In this document: piece by piece, positions 17,398 to 34,412 of the stretch | How the letters are laid out: the number at the start of each line of letters is the position of its first letter | How positions within the stretch are numbered: position 1 is the stretch's first letter | Source: Adineta vaga | Taxonomy: Eukaryota > Animalia > Rotifera | NCBI GenBank assembly: GCA_021613535.1 | Contig: CP075492.1 | Coordinates: 12,586,001-12,650,000, forward strand | Reading direction: 5' to 3' | DNA length: 64,000 bases | Notes under the pieces: generated by a model | Told to the model about the DNA's origin: nothing | Seen by the model: the letters and a program-made list of their open reading frames with translations, nothing else | The model's database searches: none | Program-made: the position numbers and the translations under genes

Positions 17398-18276
17398 GAA
17401 TCTTTTTCAATCATTTATAACAGTGATTTTGATCGATAGAAACGAATCAATATCTTTGTTTTTTTGTGTTTTTCTTTATGAATACTCATTCATTCATATT
17501 TGTTTTTAATCTTAAGTGAAAAATGATCTTTGTAACATAATGTTTTATTTGAATTTTTTTCATTTATCTTCAATCAATAGAAGAAAATCTTGAAAAGTAA
17601 TTGACAATTATTTATTGGAAGGTTATGTGATAACAAAACGTATTGAAAAGAAATCTTGAAGGCTACTGCAACTATTTCTTATATAAATTATCAATATGAT
17701 TTGTTTATTTTATCGGTTAAGTAATAAATCTTCGTACGATCATATTTCTGCTTTAAATCACCAATGATAGTGTTCTAATGATTATTGAAAGAGATAAAGT
17801 TTTCATAGAAATGCCATTGCTGACTATCTACTTCTATTTAAAGATCATCAACATCCGCATACATATAGAAGACAATTTTGTGGTAATCATTATCCATTCT
17901 TTTGATGACTTTTTTCCGGTTAACATATAGAATAATAGAATGGTTGTCCGATGAGTTCGTAGTCTATGATGAAACACGAGAAATTATCATTGCAATGAGT
18001 TTAATCACATTGTGCTTCACCGACGCACAATTACAGCTGGAATATGCATGTCATTTTTGTCTTATAGTAATGGTATTCCCTTTGGGGGGAAAGAGAAAAA
18101 ACCGATATAGCAATTGACAAGCGAACTAACTATCTTTTTTTCCTCTTTTTCTTTTTTTTGTCATCCTATTTCTCTGATCTTACCATCAATGGCGTCCTTC
18201 TTTGATCCATCAGAATGCCAAAAAAATAACTAATCATTCATCGATATATATATATACACGCGCCAAGTTATATGCA

Positions 18277-18657
18277 ATGAGCGAGTCTACAATGAAGATT
18301 GATCGTCTTATGACACGTCTACATCGTGGAATCCAACAATGTGAACATATCGAACAACGTGTCTGTCATACTGAAGAACGCTTTGGAAAACTTAATCAAT
18401 CTCTACAAACACTTTCTCATTTAATCGATGTTAGTTTCTTGATCTTGATTTCATCCGAGAAAGAAAAACTGACATGGTTACAATTAATCAAGACAAAAAA
18501 TGTGGATTTCAATAATCCCATATTTGAACAATTTATCTATCGTTTGGAATTATATTTGAATCGAACGATTACGGATAATAATGAAAAACGAGAATATGTT
18601 CAAACATTATTTCTTCTACAATCACCATCGATTATTTCATCCGATTTATTTGAATAA
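18277..18657 (+). CDS. Uncharacterised coiled-coil-like protein, copy A (N terminus intact)
   Basis: MSESTMKIDRLMTRLHRGIQQCEHIEQRV...; 3' three-quarters nearly identical to 22921-23209. Confidence 0.55.
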   Translation: MSESTMKIDRLMTRLHRGIQQCEHIEQRVCHTEERFGKLNQSLQTLSHLIDVSFLILISSEKEKLTWLQLIKTKNVDFNNPIFEQFIYRLELYLNRTITDNNEKREYVQTLFLLQSPSIISSDLFE

Positions 18658-22677: not shown

Positions 22678-22914
22678 TCCTATCTTTTGTTTTGACATCT
22701 TGGCTGTGTTTGAATATGTTAACTTTTTGTGTACATCTTATTGTTTTTTTTCTCTTTTTCGACAGTCATTATCTAATAAAACGTAGTTGTGAAATTCATC
22801 TTTGATAAACAATATCAGCTTGTTTAGGAGAAATAAATGACAATAGTGTATGTGTGGGTGTGGATGTGGGTGATGGCGGAGAGAAGATATACACACTCTC
22901 GCTATTACCCACGC

Positions 22915-23226
22915 GTTTTTCATACTGAAGAACTCTTTGGAAAACTTAATCAATCTGTACAAACACTTTCTCGTTTAATCGACGTTAGTTTCTTGGTCTT
23001 AATCTCATCCGAGAGAGAAAAACTGACATGGTTACAATTAATCAAGACAGAAAATGTGGATTTCAATAATCCCATATTTGAACAATTTATCTATCGTTTG
23101 GAATTATATTTGAATCGAACGATTACGGATAATAATGAAAAACGAGAATATGTTCAAACATTATTTCTTCTACAATTACCATCGATTATTTCATCTAGTT
23201 TATTTGATCAATTGAAAACAAAATAA
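22915..23226 (+). pseudogene. Copy B of the 18277-18657 gene, 5' end missing or replaced
   Basis: Similarity to copy A starts abruptly near 22921 (HTEE.FGKLNQS); the upstream in-frame sequence is a GT-rich low-complexity tract. Confidence 0.6.
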
Positions 23227-25041: not shown

Positions 25042-27117
25042 ATGAAACAATTGCTCCTACTACGTCGTTCATTGATATCAGTACGATTTTCTTCGTATTC
25101 GGTATCACCAGGAGCAACTGTTAGTCATGATTGGCCAAATCCACCAGTACCAGCAGAAAATGTTGATATAACTATTGCAGGAGGTGGACTCGTTGGAAGT
25201 GCTATGGCACTTGCATTTGGTAAAATACTTATATTATCTGTTTCGTTTATGTATAAATATTTTTTTAGCGGCATCTCCATTGTTTAAAAATCATAAAATA
25301 ATTCTTCTGGAATCTCAATCCAAACTACCAAAAGTTTCAAAAAATCAACCATATAGTAATCGTGTTTGTGCTTTAAATAATCAATCGATTAGTCTCTTTC
25401 AAAGTAATAATTCAAATTGAACTCTTCTATTAAAACCCAAAACTCTGTTTGTTTTCTATTGTTTAGAACTTGGTGCATGGGATTTAATGAAATCAATTCG
25501 TATACAAAAAGTCTCTCGAATGCAGGTAGAATTCATCAGATAATATCTAAATGATATATTCCTATTATTTAATTTATAGGTTTGGGATGCTTGTTCTGAA
25601 TCATTGATTGCGTTTGATCCAACAAATCAAACTGACGATAATTCTCTTGCTTATATTGTTGAAAATGATGTCATACAATCCTGTTTACTTGAACGTTTAA
25701 AAGAATTCAATGTTGAATTAAGATTAAATTCTAAAGTTAAAAAATTTGAATATGATGAAAATTCTATTCGCATACAATTACAAGATGAAAAAGTGAATCT
25801 TCGAACAGGATTATTAGTATGTTTGATTTTAATAAAAATTTCGAACAATCATGTGTTTTTATTCAGATTGCAGCTGATGGATATCAATCAAGTATACGTG
25901 AAATGGCTGGTATTTCCACAATTCAATGGAATTATGATCAATTTGGAGTTGTTGCAACATTACAATTAGCAGATAATGTTTGTCAAATTTATAGAAAAAC
26001 AAAAACGAACAGATAATTCATTATCGAACAATTTTTAGATGCCAGACAATGTTGTTGCTTGGCAAAGATTTTTACCGACTGGTCCAATTGCTTGTCTACC
26101 GGTAAAACGAATTCATTTATTTTGAACGATGATGTATTTTTTCTTCGTTTAGTTGAGCAATACACATAGTTCATTGGTATGGACAGTGCCAAAATCAATG
26201 CATAAAACGATCATGAAACTATCTGATGAACAGTTTGTTAATGAAATCAATAAAGCTTTTGTAAGAAAATGAAAAGAATAATCCAATTGAATTGATTGGT
26301 ATTTCATTTAGACATCTGATGTTTACAAACAAAATGTTGTTGTTTCAATAACAGAACGTTTACGATCCTATTGGCAACAGATCATACCAGGTATTCATCG
26401 AAATTTTCTTCTCATCAATAGATTTCTCTATCATTTTGATCTTCAACTAGCTTCACCAACAATTCCTCAATATCCACCTACAATAATCAACGTCGAACCA
26501 AGATCACGAGCAGCATTTCCATTATCGGTAAAACAGCTAAGCATTTAACTTTTTTTTTAAATATGTTCGACATATTTGTAGCTTCTAAATGCTAATCAAT
26601 ATGTTCGTCCACGTTTAGCACTTGTTGGGTAAGATTAAATCTTCTGAAATCAAAAATTAAAGTGAAAATTCTTAATTGTCTTCAGAGATTCAGCACATCG
26701 TATTCATCCAATGGCTGGTCAAGGAGTAAATATGGGTTTTGGTGATGTTGAATGTCTTGTTAAAGTACTTGAGCAAGCTGTTCGAGACGGTGCTGATTTT
26801 AGTAAGAAATTCTTTAGTTAAACATTCGGTTTTCTTCAAAAGATTCGATATAGATTCGTTAACTTATCTTGTGGATTATGAACGACAACGTCAAGCTCAA
26901 TGCTTAGCACGATTATTATCAATCGATTCATTAAATCGTCTTTATTCAACGAAATTTTTACCAATTGTTGCACTTCGTAGTGTTGGTCTCAGTTTTGTAA
27001 ATGAATTTTCACCATTCAAAGTAAATTTATCTTTCGACTGAATTGATCACAGGAGTTTCTTTCTCTGATATTTTTTTCTAGAACTTTTTTGCGAAACAAG
27101 CATCGTCAAGTTCTTGA
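25042..27117 (+). CDS. COQ6: Ubiquinone biosynthesis monooxygenase COQ6, mitochondrial, multi-exon
   Basis: Presequence-like N terminus; DITIAGGGLVG, YSNRVCAL, MQ|VWDACS, AYIVEND, AADG, AWQRFLPTGPIACLP, DSAHRIHPMAGQGVNMGFGDV. Confidence 0.95.
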
Positions 27118-27402
27118 TGACATATTACGAAAAATTTTGTTTGTATTTTTGTAATCATTAAATAAAACAAAAACTATATCGGTGGTTGCCGAGTATCAAA
27201 CCAAAAAAGTGTAGAAATGTTTTATAGACTTTGCATTGGAAGTCATTTTAGAATAACAAATATGTAGTTCTTTTTTCACTCTATCACCATTTGCTACTTA
27301 TTATCGCCAATTCTTTTTTTCATCGTCATTGCTGACGAAGTAAAATTCTCCTGTTCTCTTTATATTTACAACGCGTGGCAGTTTTACTTGCATTCGTATA
27401 CA

Positions 27403-28366
27403 ATGACTGATTCTACTGATTTATCAATAGCTGCAAATTGGATTCAACAATCTTCTTCTATATTAATTGCTGCCGGTGCTGGTCTTTCTGCTTCAGCAAT
27501 TAATCCACACTACAATGTTGGTCTTGATTATACATCCGTGGCTGCATTTCGTCAATTATATCCTCGCATGACTCAAATTTCATCCATGCGTTGTATGTAT
27601 GACGCCATTGGTAAACATGACTGGTCTCCCGAATTAATGTGGGGATACCTTTTTACACATGTAAATAAATGTCGTTACAATTGGGGTGCTACAACTGTTT
27701 ATCAAGACCTCAAACAGATCATATCAAATCAATCAATTGATTCATTTGCTGTTACAACCAATGCAGATGGAATGTTTGAACAGAATAAATTTGTAAGTTC
27801 ATGAAATAAAAATTGAGATCGAATACTTTTTTTAACGTGATTCTTTGATATAGGATATGACTCGTTTCTTAAGTACACAAGGTGATTATTCTGTTCTTCA
27901 ATGTTTAAAACCTTGTTCACGTGAATCGGTATATGATGCTCGTCCATTTATTGAACATGCACTTCCTCATGTTGATCCACAAACAATGGAAATACCTTCA
28001 AAATATATTCCACGATGTCCTCGTTGTCATGGACCGATGTTTTTCTGTGTCCGTGGCGGAGATTGGTTCATTGAATCAGCGTTTGATGAACAACGAAAAC
28101 GTTATCATGATTTTCTTCATCGTGCAATCGGTCGAAAAAATGAATTGTTTACAATTATTGAAATTGGTGTCGGTTTTAATACTCCAAGTGTTCTTCGTTG
28201 GCCAATGGATCAATTAGTTAGTAAATTTCCCAATGTAAGATTGATTCGTATCAATATGCATGCACCGGATGTACCCGTTGATGCGCGTAAAGAAAAACGT
28301 GCAATTGGTTTTGATGGAAATGCATCAAACGTTATTCATCAACTAAAAGAGATGTCTCGAACATAA
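27403..28366 (+). CDS. Class M sirtuin (SirTM-type NAD+-dependent protein ADP-ribosyltransferase), 2 exons; horizontal-transfer candidate
   Basis: LIAAGAGLSASA..GLDYT, WGY, TTNADGMF, TQGDYSVLQC-x3-C (Gln where deacylase sirtuins have the catalytic His), PRCPRCHGPM..CVRG, EIGVGFNTPSVLRWP, LIRIN. Phase-0 intron 27793-27853. Confidence 0.88.
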
Positions 28367-29042
28367 ATACTAAACAATAGAGCAAAAAAACGTTATGAAT
28401 AAATAAATAAATATAAATAAAGAGAAAAATCAATTATCGATTTTTATCGATATAATAAACAAAAGTATTTGACAGATGAACTTTTGTTTTATTTCTTTGT
28501 TAATTAACAAAATTCAAGCGTTATTTATATGATAGGCTGAAGAATAACTTTTACAAGGATGATGTTGTTATTACATGTGTATAATGATAATTGGATTCCA
28601 TTATCAGTTTGTCTTCTTCGGTCAGGGATATATACTTTCTCTAACTATTTTCCAATGATTTTTTATCGTTGCTGAAAAGAAAAAAAATGCAGAATGGAAG
28701 AACAAAAAAAAGTTGGAATCAGAGAAAAAATATATTTATTAGTCCTGTTACTTGAGTTAGTTAGTTGGACGTCAATGTTTGGATGCATTTATATTATTTT
28801 CTCTGATTCTATTCTCTCTCTCTCTCTTCACTTTCTTATATAGATACATATCGATACAATTTGGTTAACATTACATGAACATCAACTATCATGATGTTGT
28901 AATTATTGTTAGCAACAAAGTTTATTCGATCCTTATCATTCAATGTGGAATGATTTGCATACTGCTCAAATTGATACGATCTCTTCGTTTATAACTAAAT
29001 AAATTTCATCAATTTATTTTCTTAATATCGTTCAAAATAATA

Positions 29043-29081
29043 ATGCCAGCATATGGTATGGACATTGCTCTCAATCGGAAG
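29043..29081 (+). CDS. Alternative first coding exon of Mp20 copy 1 (MPAYGMDIALNRK)
   Basis: PAYG motif typical of calponin/transgelin N termini; phase-0 GT donor compatible with the exon at 30066. Confidence 0.7.
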
Positions 29082-29640
29082 GTAACAGAAAACTATGTCA
29101 TGCTGCATGTTTGTCGTGTTTGATGGAAAAGTATTTATGCATGAGATGTAATGATCAGATTTAGACAGAAAAGAAAGAAAGTGATTAGTGTTTGTATAAT
29201 CATCATTCGATGTTATTCATCATTGTTGACGAAGATTAATAATACTCTTTCATAATAACTATGCCTATGCATACAGTCATCAAAAGTGTACTATTACAGA
29301 TAATATTCTTGCATATAATTAGAGAAAGAATACAGTAAGCACCCTATGCTATACCCGCCTACATAACGATGACTAATAACTTCAATCGTTTGTACACAGA
29401 AATATGATTGATATTCTCATGTTTTGATTATGGAAAAACGTCTGTTTATATTTTATGTTTTTCTTTTTCTTTTTCTGAATATCTATGACATTAGAAATTG
29501 TAGAATAGTTTCGTCTTACAGGAAGCATTAATTTCTATGCGTTCACATTAGCTGAAGTAGAAGAGAAAAATTATACATACTAATGTTTTTCCCTCTTTTT
29601 TTCTCTTCTCTCTTTCTGTATCTGATGATCCTCCTATGGA

Positions 29641-29648
29641 TATAAATA
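29641..29648 (+). promoter_or_regulatory. TATA box of the proximal Mp20 promoter
   Basis: TATAAATA about 80 nt upstream of ATG 29723. Confidence 0.5.
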
Positions 29649-29722
29649 CATAGTTGTATTGCTTAGTATTCTCATTCTCCTTTTCTTGGATAGTGGTGAT
29701 TGCGTACATTCAGCTCTAGAAT

Positions 29723-30746
29723 ATGTCGTTCGTTGGACCTGCTTATGGATCATTGGCTGCTAATCAAGCAAAGGTGAAATATAGAGATCATATGATATCG
29801 TTGATTTCTACATTAGATGTATTAGTTTAGAATGACTAGTTGAATTATTTCCATATGTATCTTCGAAAATACTTTCTTAGAATGAGAAATAGTTGTTGTT
29901 GTTATTTGTTATTTGAGTAACGTATTGTCGGATCGATATCTTTATGTTTGAGAAAGAGACAGAGAGAGACTCTTCCGGATATGACTAAATAGATCTTTTG
30001 ATATCTATTAATATCTTTTATTTTTCGTCCTTGGAATGGCGTCTGACTGATAGTTGACTGTTTAGATCGCAGCAAAACGTGATCCAAACCTTGATCGAGA
30101 AGCACAAGAATGGGTAGAAGCAGTAATCGGAGAGAAATTTCCAAGTGGATCCTATGAAGATGCACTCAAGGACGGTGTCATCTTATGCAAGTATGTTTTC
30201 ATCTAATTTTTCCACTGATTATTAATTATATCTAAATAAATATCTATCAGATTGATAAACAAACTTCAACCGGGTGCAATTCCTAAATATGCGACATCAG
30301 GTGGCGCATTTAAATTACGCGAAAATATTTCACTCTTTCGTAAGTGTTATCTTCTACGTTGATTTCGTATTCTATATTGTTGAACATATTCTTATAGAAA
30401 ATGCTGCGCGTGCTTATGGTTTAGGCGATTCGGAACTTTTTCAAACGATTGATCTTTTTGAAAAGCATAATATTCCTCAAGTCACTCAGTGTATCTTTGC
30501 ACTCGGTCGAAATGTGAGTGGCATATTTTGTTGAAATCTTCATGCATGTTTTTTGTTTTTCTCCAGGCACAAAAAAAGAAATTTAATGGACCAACACTTG
30601 GTCCGAAAATGTCTGATGCGAATGTGCGAGAATTTTCCGAAGATCAATTACGTGCTGGACAAAATTCACTTGGTTTACTCAATGAAGGCATGAATAAAGG
30701 TGCGAATCAATCAGGCCAAAATTTTGGTCTCTCACGCCATATTTAA
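29723..30746 (+). CDS. Muscle protein 20/myophilin/transgelin-like calponin-homology protein, copy 1
   Basis: GPAYG..K|IAAKRDPNLDREAQEWVEAVIGE, YEDALKDGVILCK|LINKLQPG, FQTIDLFEKHNIPQV, GPTLGPK, REFSEDQLRAG, NKGANQSGQNFGLSRHI. Confidence 0.93.
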
Positions 30747-31249
30747 TCATCAAATATAATCTAGGAAAACGATATCTCCTTTTTCTTTCTCAGATGCTTT
30801 TTGTAATTCACGAACTAAAAATTTTAACCATTGTTTTAATAAAGAATAAACAATCATTGGTGATGAGATTAATCAATAGAATCTAACTAAATATACAACA
30901 GGTTTCATTTTCCTCTTGAAATCATATGGCGGATTGTTGAATTGTATGGCAAATATATTCATTAATAATTTTGACGATAAAACGATGCATGACTTAATTT
31001 GATGAGATCATGTTTATTCTAGCGAAAGTGATTATTATCTCATCCATGATAATTCATAGAGTTCTAATGAATGAAGAAGATACATACGATGTATGTACAT
31101 TGCCTATAAAAAATGGTTCATATCGTTTGTTGTATAACAATCCGTCATTATATTTCAAACGTAAAACAAAACTCGAAAATTGAATCTTCTCTCGTTCTCC
31201 TACTTTCACGAAAACAGTTCGAATGATCGGTTTGTTTTTTGTAGGTACA

Positions 31250-33725: not shown

Positions 33726-34412
33726 ATGTCAGGAGGAAAACGTAACCCAGAACTTGATAAAGAAGCTCAACAATGGATTGAAGCTGTTATTGGAGAAAAA
33801 TTCCCAGGTGGTTCGTATGATGATGCACTTAAAGATGGAATACTTTTATGCAAGTAGGTCATCGAATTAATTTTCTCGATTGTTTTTTTCTAAAACATAT
33901 CTTTATTTACAAAAGATTAATGAATAAACTTCAACCTGGTTCTGTTGCAAAGATCTGTACACAAGGTGGAGGATTTAAATTACGTGAAAATGTTTCTGCT
34001 TTTCGTATGTATTTCAAATAATTATTCTTGTTATTTTTGTTTTATTCAATAATAATCAAATAGAAAATGCTGCTCGAGCTTATGGTCTACCTGATGCTGA
34101 ACTATTTCAAACAGTAGATCTTTTTGAAAAACGAAATATTGCACAAGTTACTCAATGTATCCATGCACTTGGTCGACAAGTAAATACTAACATCGAGATT
34201 CTTATAAATACTCAATCTATTGCTTCTTTTAGGCACAAAAAAAGAACTTCAACGGACCAATACTTGGACCAAAAATGTCTGATGCTAATGTTCGAGAATT
34301 TACTGATGAACAATTACGTGCCGGACAAAATACGGTTGGTTTACTCAACGATGGAATGAATAAAGGTGCAAGTCAAGCTGGTCAAAATTTTGGCTTATCA
34401 CGTCATATATAA
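33726..34412 (+). CDS. Mp20/myophilin/transgelin-like protein, copy 2
   Basis: MSGGKRNPELDKEAQQWIEAVIGEKF...NKGASQAGQNFGLSRHI; same intron positions as copy 1. Confidence 0.92.

What the first reader, a model, noticed from the sequence alone, without database searches (positions are those of the whole stretch)
27403..28366. Stand-alone, intron-containing class M sirtuin (SirTM-type ADP-ribosyltransferase) in an animal genome
Seen: an intact sirtuin with QGDY in place of the catalytic HG, GAGLSA, TTNADG, a Zn ribbon and E.GVGFNTP..LRWP, plus one clean spliceosomal intron, embedded between COQ6 and Mp20. Known: class M sirtuins lack the catalytic His and ADP-ribosylate lipoylated GcvH-L in Firmicute pathogens, where they are operon-linked to a Zn-macrodomain; fungi have macrodomain fusions; the system is tied to oxidative-stress response and is not among animal SIRT1-7. 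Inference: a domesticated horizontal acquisition giving an animal a microbial reversible ADP-ribosylation writer. No macrodomain or GcvH-L partner is in this window, so its target and eraser are open questions, which matters in a lineage tolerant of desiccation and ROS.
Basis: partly seen in the sequence, partly recalled or inferred. Interest (0 to 1): 0.85.

Follow-up and report, generated by a model that had tools for sequence, protein, structure and literature searches.

The report
Rotifer split SirTM ADP-ribose switch
Bdelloid rotifers carry a microbial enzyme pair, so far described only in microbes, that should add and remove ADP-ribose tags on proteins; the two genes now sit on different chromosomes and both have gained the DNA motif that animals use to switch genes on under oxidative stress.

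Summary
Window 27403-28366 is an intact two-exon gene (Adineta vaga, UJR10605.1) whose 61-nt intron is spliced in an RNA run. It has every SirTM signature: QG for HG, N120, R197, GVGFNTP and a zinc ribbon; its model matches Mfs1 and SpySirTM at TM 0.82. Orthologues occur in all sampled bdelloids, including Didymodactylos, under purifying selection; synteny holds across Adineta and Rotaria.

The 'missing' eraser exists: one intact zinc-macrodomain on chromosome 5 (UJR20603.1), conserved across Adineta and Rotaria. The SirTM nests among microbial-eukaryote macrodomain-SirTM fusions (Mfs1); grouping with Capsaspora is rejected (AU p=0.013). Best reading: a fusion gene acquired from a protist or fungus, later split; the macrodomain's origin is unresolved.

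Both genes carry a conserved antioxidant-response-element-like motif upstream (6/6 out-of-sample SirTM loci; 0/18 neighbouring genes), though A. vaga's reference copies each have one mismatch. The GcvH-L target is not supported: there is no GcvH-L, and neither enzyme has a mitochondrial presequence. Activity, target and stress induction are untested. I found no paper and no earlier scan note on this system in animals.

The parts
27320..27341 (.). Conserved palindromic upstream element (GTCA-N4-TGAC core). In orthologues it reads as an antioxidant response element, RTGACnnnGC, on the minus strand; the A. vaga reference has T at 27320 where the others have G
   Evidence: Alignments of 12 bdelloid upstream regions; scans and controls
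27403..27792 (+). SirTM exon 1 (aa 1-130): Rossmann GAGLSA loop, bdelloid-specific 7-aa insert, TTNADG with Asn120 (SpySirTM Asn118)
27793..27853 (+). 61-nt GT..AG phase-0 intron after codon 130; same position in A. steineri, two Rotaria species and seven metagenomic loci; absent in A. ricciae and D. carnosus
   Evidence: RNA joint 27791 to 27854 in run X16
27854..28366 (+). SirTM exon 2 (aa 131-300 plus stop)
27878..27889 (+). QGDY: Gln139-Gly140 in place of the catalytic His-Gly of deacylase sirtuins (SpySirTM Gln137)
   Evidence: invariant in 11 bdelloid and 160 fusion sequences
27902..28027 (+). Zinc-ribbon cysteines C147, C151, C185, C188
28052..28054 (+). Arg197 (SpySirTM Arg192, needed for ADP-ribosyl transfer)
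28166..28186 (+). Class-specific GVGx[NT]TP pyrophosphate-binding motif (aa 235-241)
25042..27041 (+). Flanking host gene COQ6 (multi-intron; context only)
   Evidence: Spliced joints; FAD_binding_3/SE orthologues next to the SirTM in Rotaria and Adineta
28775..30783 (+). Flanking host calponin-homology (Mp20-like) gene (context only)
   Evidence: Spliced contigs; CH/calponin orthologues

Best explanation
The gene is the writer of a two-part reversible mono-ADP-ribosylation switch. It binds NAD+ in a sirtuin fold and, lacking the catalytic His, transfers ADP-ribose to an acidic residue of a target protein instead of deacylating it (inferred from SpySirTM). The eraser is the single Zn-macrodomain at G000:C5:5847841-5848734 (pairing inferred). 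The writer came into the bdelloid stem lineage from a microbial eukaryote, most likely as an Mfs1 macrodomain-SirTM fusion that later split into two unlinked genes. Both genes then came under a host CNC/Nrf2-small-Maf-type antioxidant response element, so the pair is probably co-induced by oxidative or electrophile stress and acts outside mitochondria on an unidentified, possibly acylated or lipoylated, protein. Shown: gene structure, splicing, residues, fold, orthology, selection, the partner gene, motif conservation. Inferred: catalysis (about 0.8), pairing (about 0.8), eukaryotic donor (about 0.75), fission of one fusion (about 0.55), stress co-regulation (about 0.6), target (unknown).
For: Sequence and fold searches of solved structures give SirTMs first: 8RSN E=1e-50 and 5A3A E=6.5e-22; Foldseek TM 0.82 to both, against at most 0.67 for canonical sirtuins among the top 50. 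Catalytic N, Q, R and the zinc Cys are invariant in 11 bdelloid sequences and match the residues shown essential in PMC4518038. dN/dS is 0.09-0.20 for the SirTM and 0.22 for the macrodomain. One SirTM and one Zn-macrodomain per haploid genome, no fusion. The macrodomain has NAAN, Cx4HxC and Dx3H and passes the NCBIfam cut-off for protein-ADP-ribose hydrolase, 279.7 against 272 bits. Both genes co-occur in three Adineta and five Rotaria taxa. SirTM trees put the bdelloid clade (100/100) inside the eukaryotic fusion clade (99/95 and 100/96); 8 of 8 diagnostic columns side with fusions; a concatenated quick tree puts the pair inside a 97-supported fusion clade. ARE-like motif: 5/6 discovery loci, 6/6 out-of-sample loci, three species' macrodomain genes with ATGACTCAGC, 0/18 neighbouring genes, background 7% per 250 nt. 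CNC-like and small-Maf-like bZIP genes are present. Candida Mfs1 is induced by oxidative stress through the bZIP factor Cap1 (PMC13720257).
Against: No activity, target or induction data. The macrodomain tree is unresolved at its base and the best BLAST hits of the macrodomain are prokaryotic stand-alone proteins. The AU test does not reject placing the bdelloid SirTM outside the fusion clade (p=0.093). No stand-alone Zn-macrodomain of D. carnosus came up, and its SirTM has no ARE match in 600 nt. The A. vaga reference has one mismatch to the ARE at both genes. The ARE pattern was first chosen after seeing the alignment, related loci are not independent, and the macrodomain site is also a plain AP-1 site. 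Two of three RNA-like runs gave no, or only a partial and loose-ended, contig over the gene.
Confidence: 0.6

Rival explanations
1. Same writer/eraser function, but two separate acquisitions: the SirTM from a eukaryotic fusion-bearing donor and the Zn-macrodomain from a bacterial or archaeal two-gene operon (or both from an unsampled donor with an unfused pair).
For: Top BLAST hits of the macrodomain are stand-alone prokaryotic proteins; diagnostic columns are mixed and profile scores tie (340-344 bits). Stand-alone SirTM-length proteins are on record for Spironema and Colponema.
Against: The macrodomain does not fall inside the main prokaryotic clade (82/86) in the careful tree; the concatenated tree places the pair among fusions; one transfer is the simpler account of a matched pair.
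Confidence: 0.3
2. One reading: the enzyme ADP-ribosylates a lipoylated H-protein or E2 lipoyl domain and shields lipoate from oxidation, as in the Staphylococcus/Streptococcus operon.
For: This is the only demonstrated SirTM reaction (PMC4518038, PMC12440151). A. vaga also has an extra, E. coli LplA-type lipoate salvage ligase.
Against: Only two GcvH genes, both full-length canonical with presequence-like N-termini. SirTM and macrodomain start directly at the conserved domain with no presequence and no conserved upstream frame. Zn-macrodomains from fusions and two-gene operons do not demodify GcvH-L (PMC11490716). No ARE upstream of GcvH or LplA.
Confidence: 0.15
3. The protein is not a protein ADP-ribosyltransferase in rotifers: it is an NAD+ hydrolase, a small-molecule or nucleic-acid ADP-ribosylating enzyme, or a binder of acyl-lysine or ADP-ribose, and the macrodomain works independently.
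For: I found no report of a substrate for any Mfs1-type SirTM (PMC11490716 and PMC13720257 call it open). The genes are unlinked and the genome has many other macrodomains.
Against: All residues needed for protein MARylation in SpySirTM are invariant; both genes are retained together and share a cis-element class.
Confidence: 0.12
4. Vertical inheritance from the holozoan ancestor (Capsaspora has Mfs1) with loss in all other animals.
For: Mfs1 is spread over many eukaryotic groups, Capsaspora included.
Against: Grouping the bdelloid SirTM with the Capsaspora clade is rejected (AU p=0.013). No other named animal, monogonont rotifers included, is among the best hits of three searches. The gene has none or one intron where neighbouring COQ6 has 11 or more.
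Confidence: 0.05
5. Contaminant or assembly artefact.
For: None found.
Against: On a 20-Mb chromosome between host genes, same GC as the window, spliced in RNA, syntenic in five other bdelloid assemblies.
Confidence: 0.01

Closest known systems
Mfs1, macrodomain-fused SirTM of fungi, oomycetes and amoebae (Fusarium oxysporum Foc1Mfs1, PDB 8RSN; Candida albicans orf19.2285)
   Same: Both domains present with all signature residues; best structural match; SirTM nests among these fusions; no GcvH-L partner; likely stress control through a bZIP factor.
   Different: Two separate genes on different chromosomes instead of one polypeptide; in an animal; intron gained in the writer; animal ARE-type cis-element.
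SirTM/Zn-Macro/GcvH-L/LplA2 extended operon of Streptococcus pyogenes and Staphylococcus aureus (PDB 5A3A; PMC4518038)
   Same: QG, Asn, Arg and GVGx[NT]TP motifs; Zn-macrodomain eraser type; link to oxidative stress.
   Different: No operon, no GcvH-L, more distant in sequence (E=6.5e-22 against 1e-50 for Mfs1).
Minimal two-gene SirTM/Zn-Macro operons (e.g. Methanobrevibacter oralis MorMacro, PDB 8RSI)
   Same: Two stand-alone proteins without GcvH-L; MorMacro is the best solved match of the rotifer macrodomain (E=2e-62).
   Different: The rotifer genes are unlinked, and the writer groups with eukaryotic fusions.
Animal sirtuins SIRT1-7 (classes I-IV), including the weak ADP-ribosyltransferases SIRT4 and SIRT6
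   Same: Sirtuin fold with zinc ribbon; NAD+ use.
   Different: They keep the catalytic His; 12-18% identity and TM at most 0.67 to the model; A. vaga has its own HG-bearing sirtuins elsewhere.

Membership tests
SirTM protein clade (class M sirtuin, sequence and structure) | QG in place of the catalytic HG | tested here: met
   Q139-G140, aligned to SpySirTM Q137
SirTM protein clade (class M sirtuin, sequence and structure) | Catalytic Asn118 and Arg192 equivalents | tested here: met
   N120 and R197, invariant in 11 bdelloid sequences
SirTM protein clade (class M sirtuin, sequence and structure) | [quoted passage not shown] | tested here: met
   GVGFNTP 235-241
SirTM protein clade (class M sirtuin, sequence and structure) | Sirtuin fold with zinc domain, closest to solved SirTMs | tested here: met
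   Model pLDDT 95.9; Foldseek 8RSN and 5A3A E about 1e-23, TM 0.82; next hit E 3e-11
SirTM protein clade (class M sirtuin, sequence and structure) | Branches within class M rather than classes I-IV or U | tested here: met
   Nested among QG-bearing fusions. Canonical classes were not put in the tree; they are excluded by the sequence and fold searches
SirTM protein clade (class M sirtuin, sequence and structure) | Protein mono-ADP-ribosyltransferase activity, no deacylase activity | not testable with these tools
   Needs an enzyme assay
Macrodomain-linked SirTM system as defined in PMC4518038 (operon or Mfs1 fusion) | Zn-macrodomain adjacent in an operon or fused in one polypeptide | tested here: not met
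   SirTM on chromosome 3, Zn-macrodomain on chromosome 5; no fusion in the genome. Not filed under either described architecture
Extended SirTM operon (Firmicutes) | GcvH-L carrier and LplA2 ligase encoded with the pair | tested here: not met
   Only two canonical GcvH genes with presequence-like N-termini; an LplA-type ligase exists but is unlinked and presequence-bearing
Zn-Macro (partner gene on chromosome 5) | Cx4HxC zinc loop, NAAN motif, Dx3H dyad | tested here: met
   All present and conserved in the bdelloid sequences listed (NAGN variant in some); NCBIfam NF003163 above cut-off
Zn-Macro (partner gene on chromosome 5) | N-terminal three-helix bundle extension | tested here: inconclusive
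   About 110 residues precede the macro fold and align to MorMacro and Foc1Mfs1 from residue 52-58; no model was built
Zn-Macro (partner gene on chromosome 5) | Zinc-dependent removal of Asp/Glu-linked ADP-ribose | not testable with these tools
   Needs an enzyme assay
Antioxidant response element (CNC/Nrf2-small Maf) | Core TGACnnnGC (PMC11745349) in the 5' region | tested here: inconclusive
   Met in 11 of 12 Adineta/Rotaria-type SirTM loci and 3 of 5 macrodomain upstream regions; one mismatch in the A. vaga reference at both genes
Antioxidant response element (CNC/Nrf2-small Maf) | Bound by CNC-Maf and needed for stress induction | not testable with these tools
   Needs binding and reporter assays; public expression tables were cut short

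The most novel reading that the evidence does not exclude
An animal lineage took one microbial writer-eraser fusion gene, split it into two unlinked genes, and wired each separately into its own Nrf2/CNC oxidative-stress regulon, creating a PARP-independent, reversible ADP-ribosylation pathway with a new cytosolic target that contributes to bdelloid tolerance of reactive oxygen species.
Probability: 0.3. Interest if true: 0.85.

Novelty: new variant of a known kind. Interest (0 to 1): 0.66.

Why it matters
SirTM systems are described only in bacteria, archaea and microbial eukaryotes, as operons or fusions, and the target of the eukaryotic (Mfs1) form is an open question in the field (PMC11490716, PMC13720257). 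A single-copy, unfused writer and eraser in a laboratory animal lets each half be removed or assayed on its own, which the fusion makes hard. The shared ARE-like motif suggests that a transferred two-part signalling module was re-coordinated by host cis-elements after it lost physical linkage, a direct case of regulatory domestication. Against that, gene transfer is common in bdelloids (8.3% of genes, PMC10809525), so the transfer itself is not surprising.

Tried and rejected
Pfam and NCBIfam give no significant family for the SirTM, exon by exon or whole, which explains why SIR2 domain screens miss it. A second SirTM copy or a fusion in A. vaga: none. A hidden N-terminal extension or presequence: the upstream tblastn signal is a conserved non-coding element, with stops in frame in the other species. 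The GTCA-N4-TGAC palindrome as a general core-promoter motif: not enriched genome-wide, 363 against 311 for the reversed control. The D. carnosus fusion as the unsplit ancestor: not its sister in any careful tree, but not rejected either (AU p=0.088). Stress expression data: supplements of PMC10809525, PMC12220480 and PMC11258130 gave no hit; the tables are cut short and their gene ids may not match the NCBI tags. Paper searches for bdelloid plus sirtuin, macrodomain or SirTM found no description. The careful concatenated tree did not finish in two runs; only the quick tree is cited.

Full report
1. Observation. The window lies on a 100.8-Mb, six-contig genome; the database names the encoded protein as Adineta vaga UJR10605.1, locus I4U23_014802. 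The gene runs 27403-28366 on the plus strand: exon 1 of 130 codons, a 61-nt GT..AG phase-0 intron at 27793-27853, and exon 2 of 170 codons plus stop. Run X16, whose contigs skip the introns of the neighbouring genes, holds a contig joining 27791 to 27854 with one allelic base between; the DNA-like run X12 is unspliced. The gene is therefore transcribed and spliced. Two other RNA-like runs gave no, or only a partial, contig over it, which fits low or conditional expression but cannot measure it. Following the operators' note I searched the model exon by exon by reference and left the joined step out; later whole-protein steps used the stored database protein P0282 by its id. In scripts I located the introns of orthologous loci by testing which GT..AG removal reproduces the stored protein; nothing joined was printed or sent on.

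2. Protein family. Against solved structures the only significant sequence hits are the Fusarium macrodomain-SirTM fusion Mfs1 (8RSN, E=1e-50) and Streptococcus pyogenes SirTM (5A3A, E=6.5e-22) (exon-wise). The AlphaFold model (pLDDT 95.9) matches both at TM 0.82; canonical sirtuins follow at E of 3e-11 or weaker. The residues that PMC4518038 showed essential for ADP-ribosyl transfer (Asn118, Gln137, Arg192) and the class motif GVGx[NT]TP map to N120, Q139, R197 and 235-241, and are invariant in 11 bdelloid sequences, as are the four zinc cysteines. Pfam and NCBIfam do not recognise the protein, so domain-based sirtuin counts miss it.

3. Distribution and domestication. Stand-alone 300-304-aa orthologues, 69-86% identical, occur in A. 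ricciae, A. steineri, Rotaria sordida, R. socialis, R. magnacalcarata, R. sp. Silwood1 and Silwood2, and Didymodactylos carnosus, which marks the deepest known split in the class (PMC7943196). The order COQ6, SirTM, calponin-homology gene is kept in Adineta and Rotaria, with eIF2-alpha upstream where the loci reach it; the D. carnosus copy is intronless and not syntenic. The intron sits after codon 130 in A. vaga, A. steineri, two Rotaria and seven metagenomic loci, and is absent in A. ricciae; it was most simply gained after the Didymodactylos split and lost once. dN/dS against Rotaria is 0.09 (exon 1) and 0.20 (exon 2). No other named animal is among the best hits of three searches; each lists only its top 120, so this is not proof of absence. 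The gene is kept in the non-desiccating R. magnacalcarata and R. socialis, so its role is not confined to desiccation.

4. The eraser. A genome-wide macrodomain search gave 27 matches, exactly one with the zinc loop: an intronless 297-aa gene at G000:C5:5847841-5848734 (UJR20603.1). It has NAAN, Cx4HxC and Dx3H, the features that define Zn-Macros in PMC11490716, passes the NCBIfam cut-off for protein-ADP-ribose hydrolase, and its five best solved matches are Zn-Macros. Orthologues exist in the same Adineta and Rotaria species and in many metagenomic contigs, with dN/dS 0.22 and partly conserved neighbours. Searching the genome with a full fusion protein finds the macrodomain half on chromosome 5 and the SirTM half on chromosome 3, one each. 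D. carnosus has, besides its stand-alone SirTM, an intronless 647-aa Mfs1-type fusion in two assemblies, on contigs of host-like GC; no stand-alone Zn-macrodomain of that species came up.

5. Origin. In two careful trees the bdelloid SirTMs form a clade (100/100) inside a clade of eukaryotic fusions (99/95 and 100/96), apart from prokaryotic stand-alone SirTMs; the sister group changes between trees and is weakly supported. All eight columns that separate fusions from stand-alone proteins and are fixed in bdelloids side with the fusions; the best non-bdelloid BLAST hits are Acrasis, Soliformovum and Ceratiomyxa fusions at 44-49%. AU tests: grouping with the Capsaspora clade, the vertical-inheritance case, is rejected (p=0.013; two of its rows were chosen from the tree); a position outside the fusion clade is disfavoured but not rejected (p=0.093); grouping with the D. 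carnosus fusion is not rejected (p=0.088). The macrodomain tree is a polytomy at the relevant level, outside the main prokaryotic clade, and its sequence signal is mixed. A quick tree of both domains side by side places the bdelloid pair inside a 97-supported fusion clade, next to Dermamoeba at 89; this assumes a shared history. Transfer of the writer from a microbial eukaryote is likely; fission of a single fusion is the simplest but unproven account of the pair.

6. A shared upstream element. The tblastn signal upstream of the start codon is non-coding. It is a palindrome, GTCA-N4-TGAC, about 65-85 nt before the ATG, and in five of six species its left arm reads RTGACnnnGC on the minus strand, with a variable middle and fixed ends. 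That is the core of the antioxidant response element bound by CNC/Nrf2-small Maf (TGACNNNGC; PMC11745349). Because I noticed this after the fact, I fetched six new loci: all six carry the pattern within 131 nt of the ATG, five at a second, more distal site, against shuffle probabilities of 0.014-0.078 each (the loci are related, so these do not multiply). The macrodomain gene has ATGACTCAGC, the full NF-E2/ARE site by my knowledge of the consensus and also an AP-1 site, 191-221 nt upstream in A. steineri, Rotaria Silwood1 and R. socialis. Controls: 0 of 18 neighbouring genes have the pattern within 250 nt; background is 7% of 250-nt windows, and 0 of 1015 for TGACTCAGC. A. vaga has CNC-like and small-Maf-like bZIP genes. 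The A. vaga reference departs by one base at both genes. At the SirTM, contigs of two runs begin at 27321 and a half-depth contig ends at 27350, which implies that the second haplotype differs at 27320, the mismatched position; which base it has I could not read. Candida Mfs1 is induced by oxidative stress through the bZIP factor Cap1 (PMC13720257), a parallel. I found no usable expression data.

7. Target. The genome has two GcvH genes, both full-length with presequence-like N-termini. Writer and eraser start at the conserved domain boundary with no presequence, which points to the cytosol or nucleus, whereas lipoylated proteins of animals are mitochondrial (own knowledge). Zn-macrodomains from fusions and two-gene operons do not demodify GcvH-L but do remove Asp/Glu-linked ADP-ribose from another substrate (PMC11490716). 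The likeliest target is a non-mitochondrial protein modified on Asp or Glu, perhaps next to an acylated lysine as in the bacterial case. In Candida, loss of Mfs1 improved growth in peroxide, so the mark may hold a response off rather than switch it on.

8. Comparison and verdict. As a protein it belongs to the SirTM clade by every sequence and structure test. As a system it fails the defining linkage test: it is neither an operon nor a fusion, but an unlinked pair, an architecture I did not find described. The papers on SirTM list bacteria, archaea, fungi, oomycetes and Entamoeba, and no animals; searches for bdelloid sirtuins or macrodomains found no description, and the scan's own notes hold none. 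Verdict: real, new variant of a known kind, interest 0.66.

Noticed in passing
G000:C5:9544894-9546129 (L080:1399-2634): An intron-containing, E. coli LplA-type lipoate-protein ligase with the bacterial C-terminal domain and a presequence-like N-terminus, in addition to LIPT1-like and LIPT2-like genes (E=1e-47 to E. coli LplA, 1e-9 to bovine LIPT1). It could give rotifer mitochondria a lipoate salvage route that animals normally lack.
   Followed up: partly
L067:1641-3584 and L068:1397-3340 (Didymodactylos carnosus): An intronless 647-aa Mfs1-type macrodomain-SirTM fusion in two D. carnosus assemblies, 46% identical to the A. vaga SirTM; either a second transfer or the unsplit ancestral form.
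   Followed up: partly
G000:C1:612271-613113, C6:1873563-1874483, C3:14419648-14420217: Three sirtuins in long open frames that keep the HG motif; two of them are weak hits of the SirTM domain. They look unlike SIRT1-7 and may be further horizontal acquisitions.
   Followed up: no
window 27621-27792: The second allele seen in runs X12 and X16 differs at V87A, T98S and A116V, each toward a residue found in other bdelloids, plus silent changes.
   Followed up: partly
window 30066-30746 and 33726-34409: Two tandem calponin-homology paralogues follow the SirTM; the tandem is kept in Rotaria Silwood1 and in L065.
   Followed up: no
window 18178-18654 and 22837-23223: Two open frames that both match one unannotated 126-aa gene of Rotaria Silwood1 (L071:486-866); local paralogues of unknown function.
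   Followed up: no
genome-wide: At least 27 macrodomain matches and 30 SIR2 matches (exon-level, not gene counts); in the PMC10809525 tables several SIRT6/SRT1-like Sir2 genes show log2 fold changes of 4-5 in some stress conditions.
   Followed up: no
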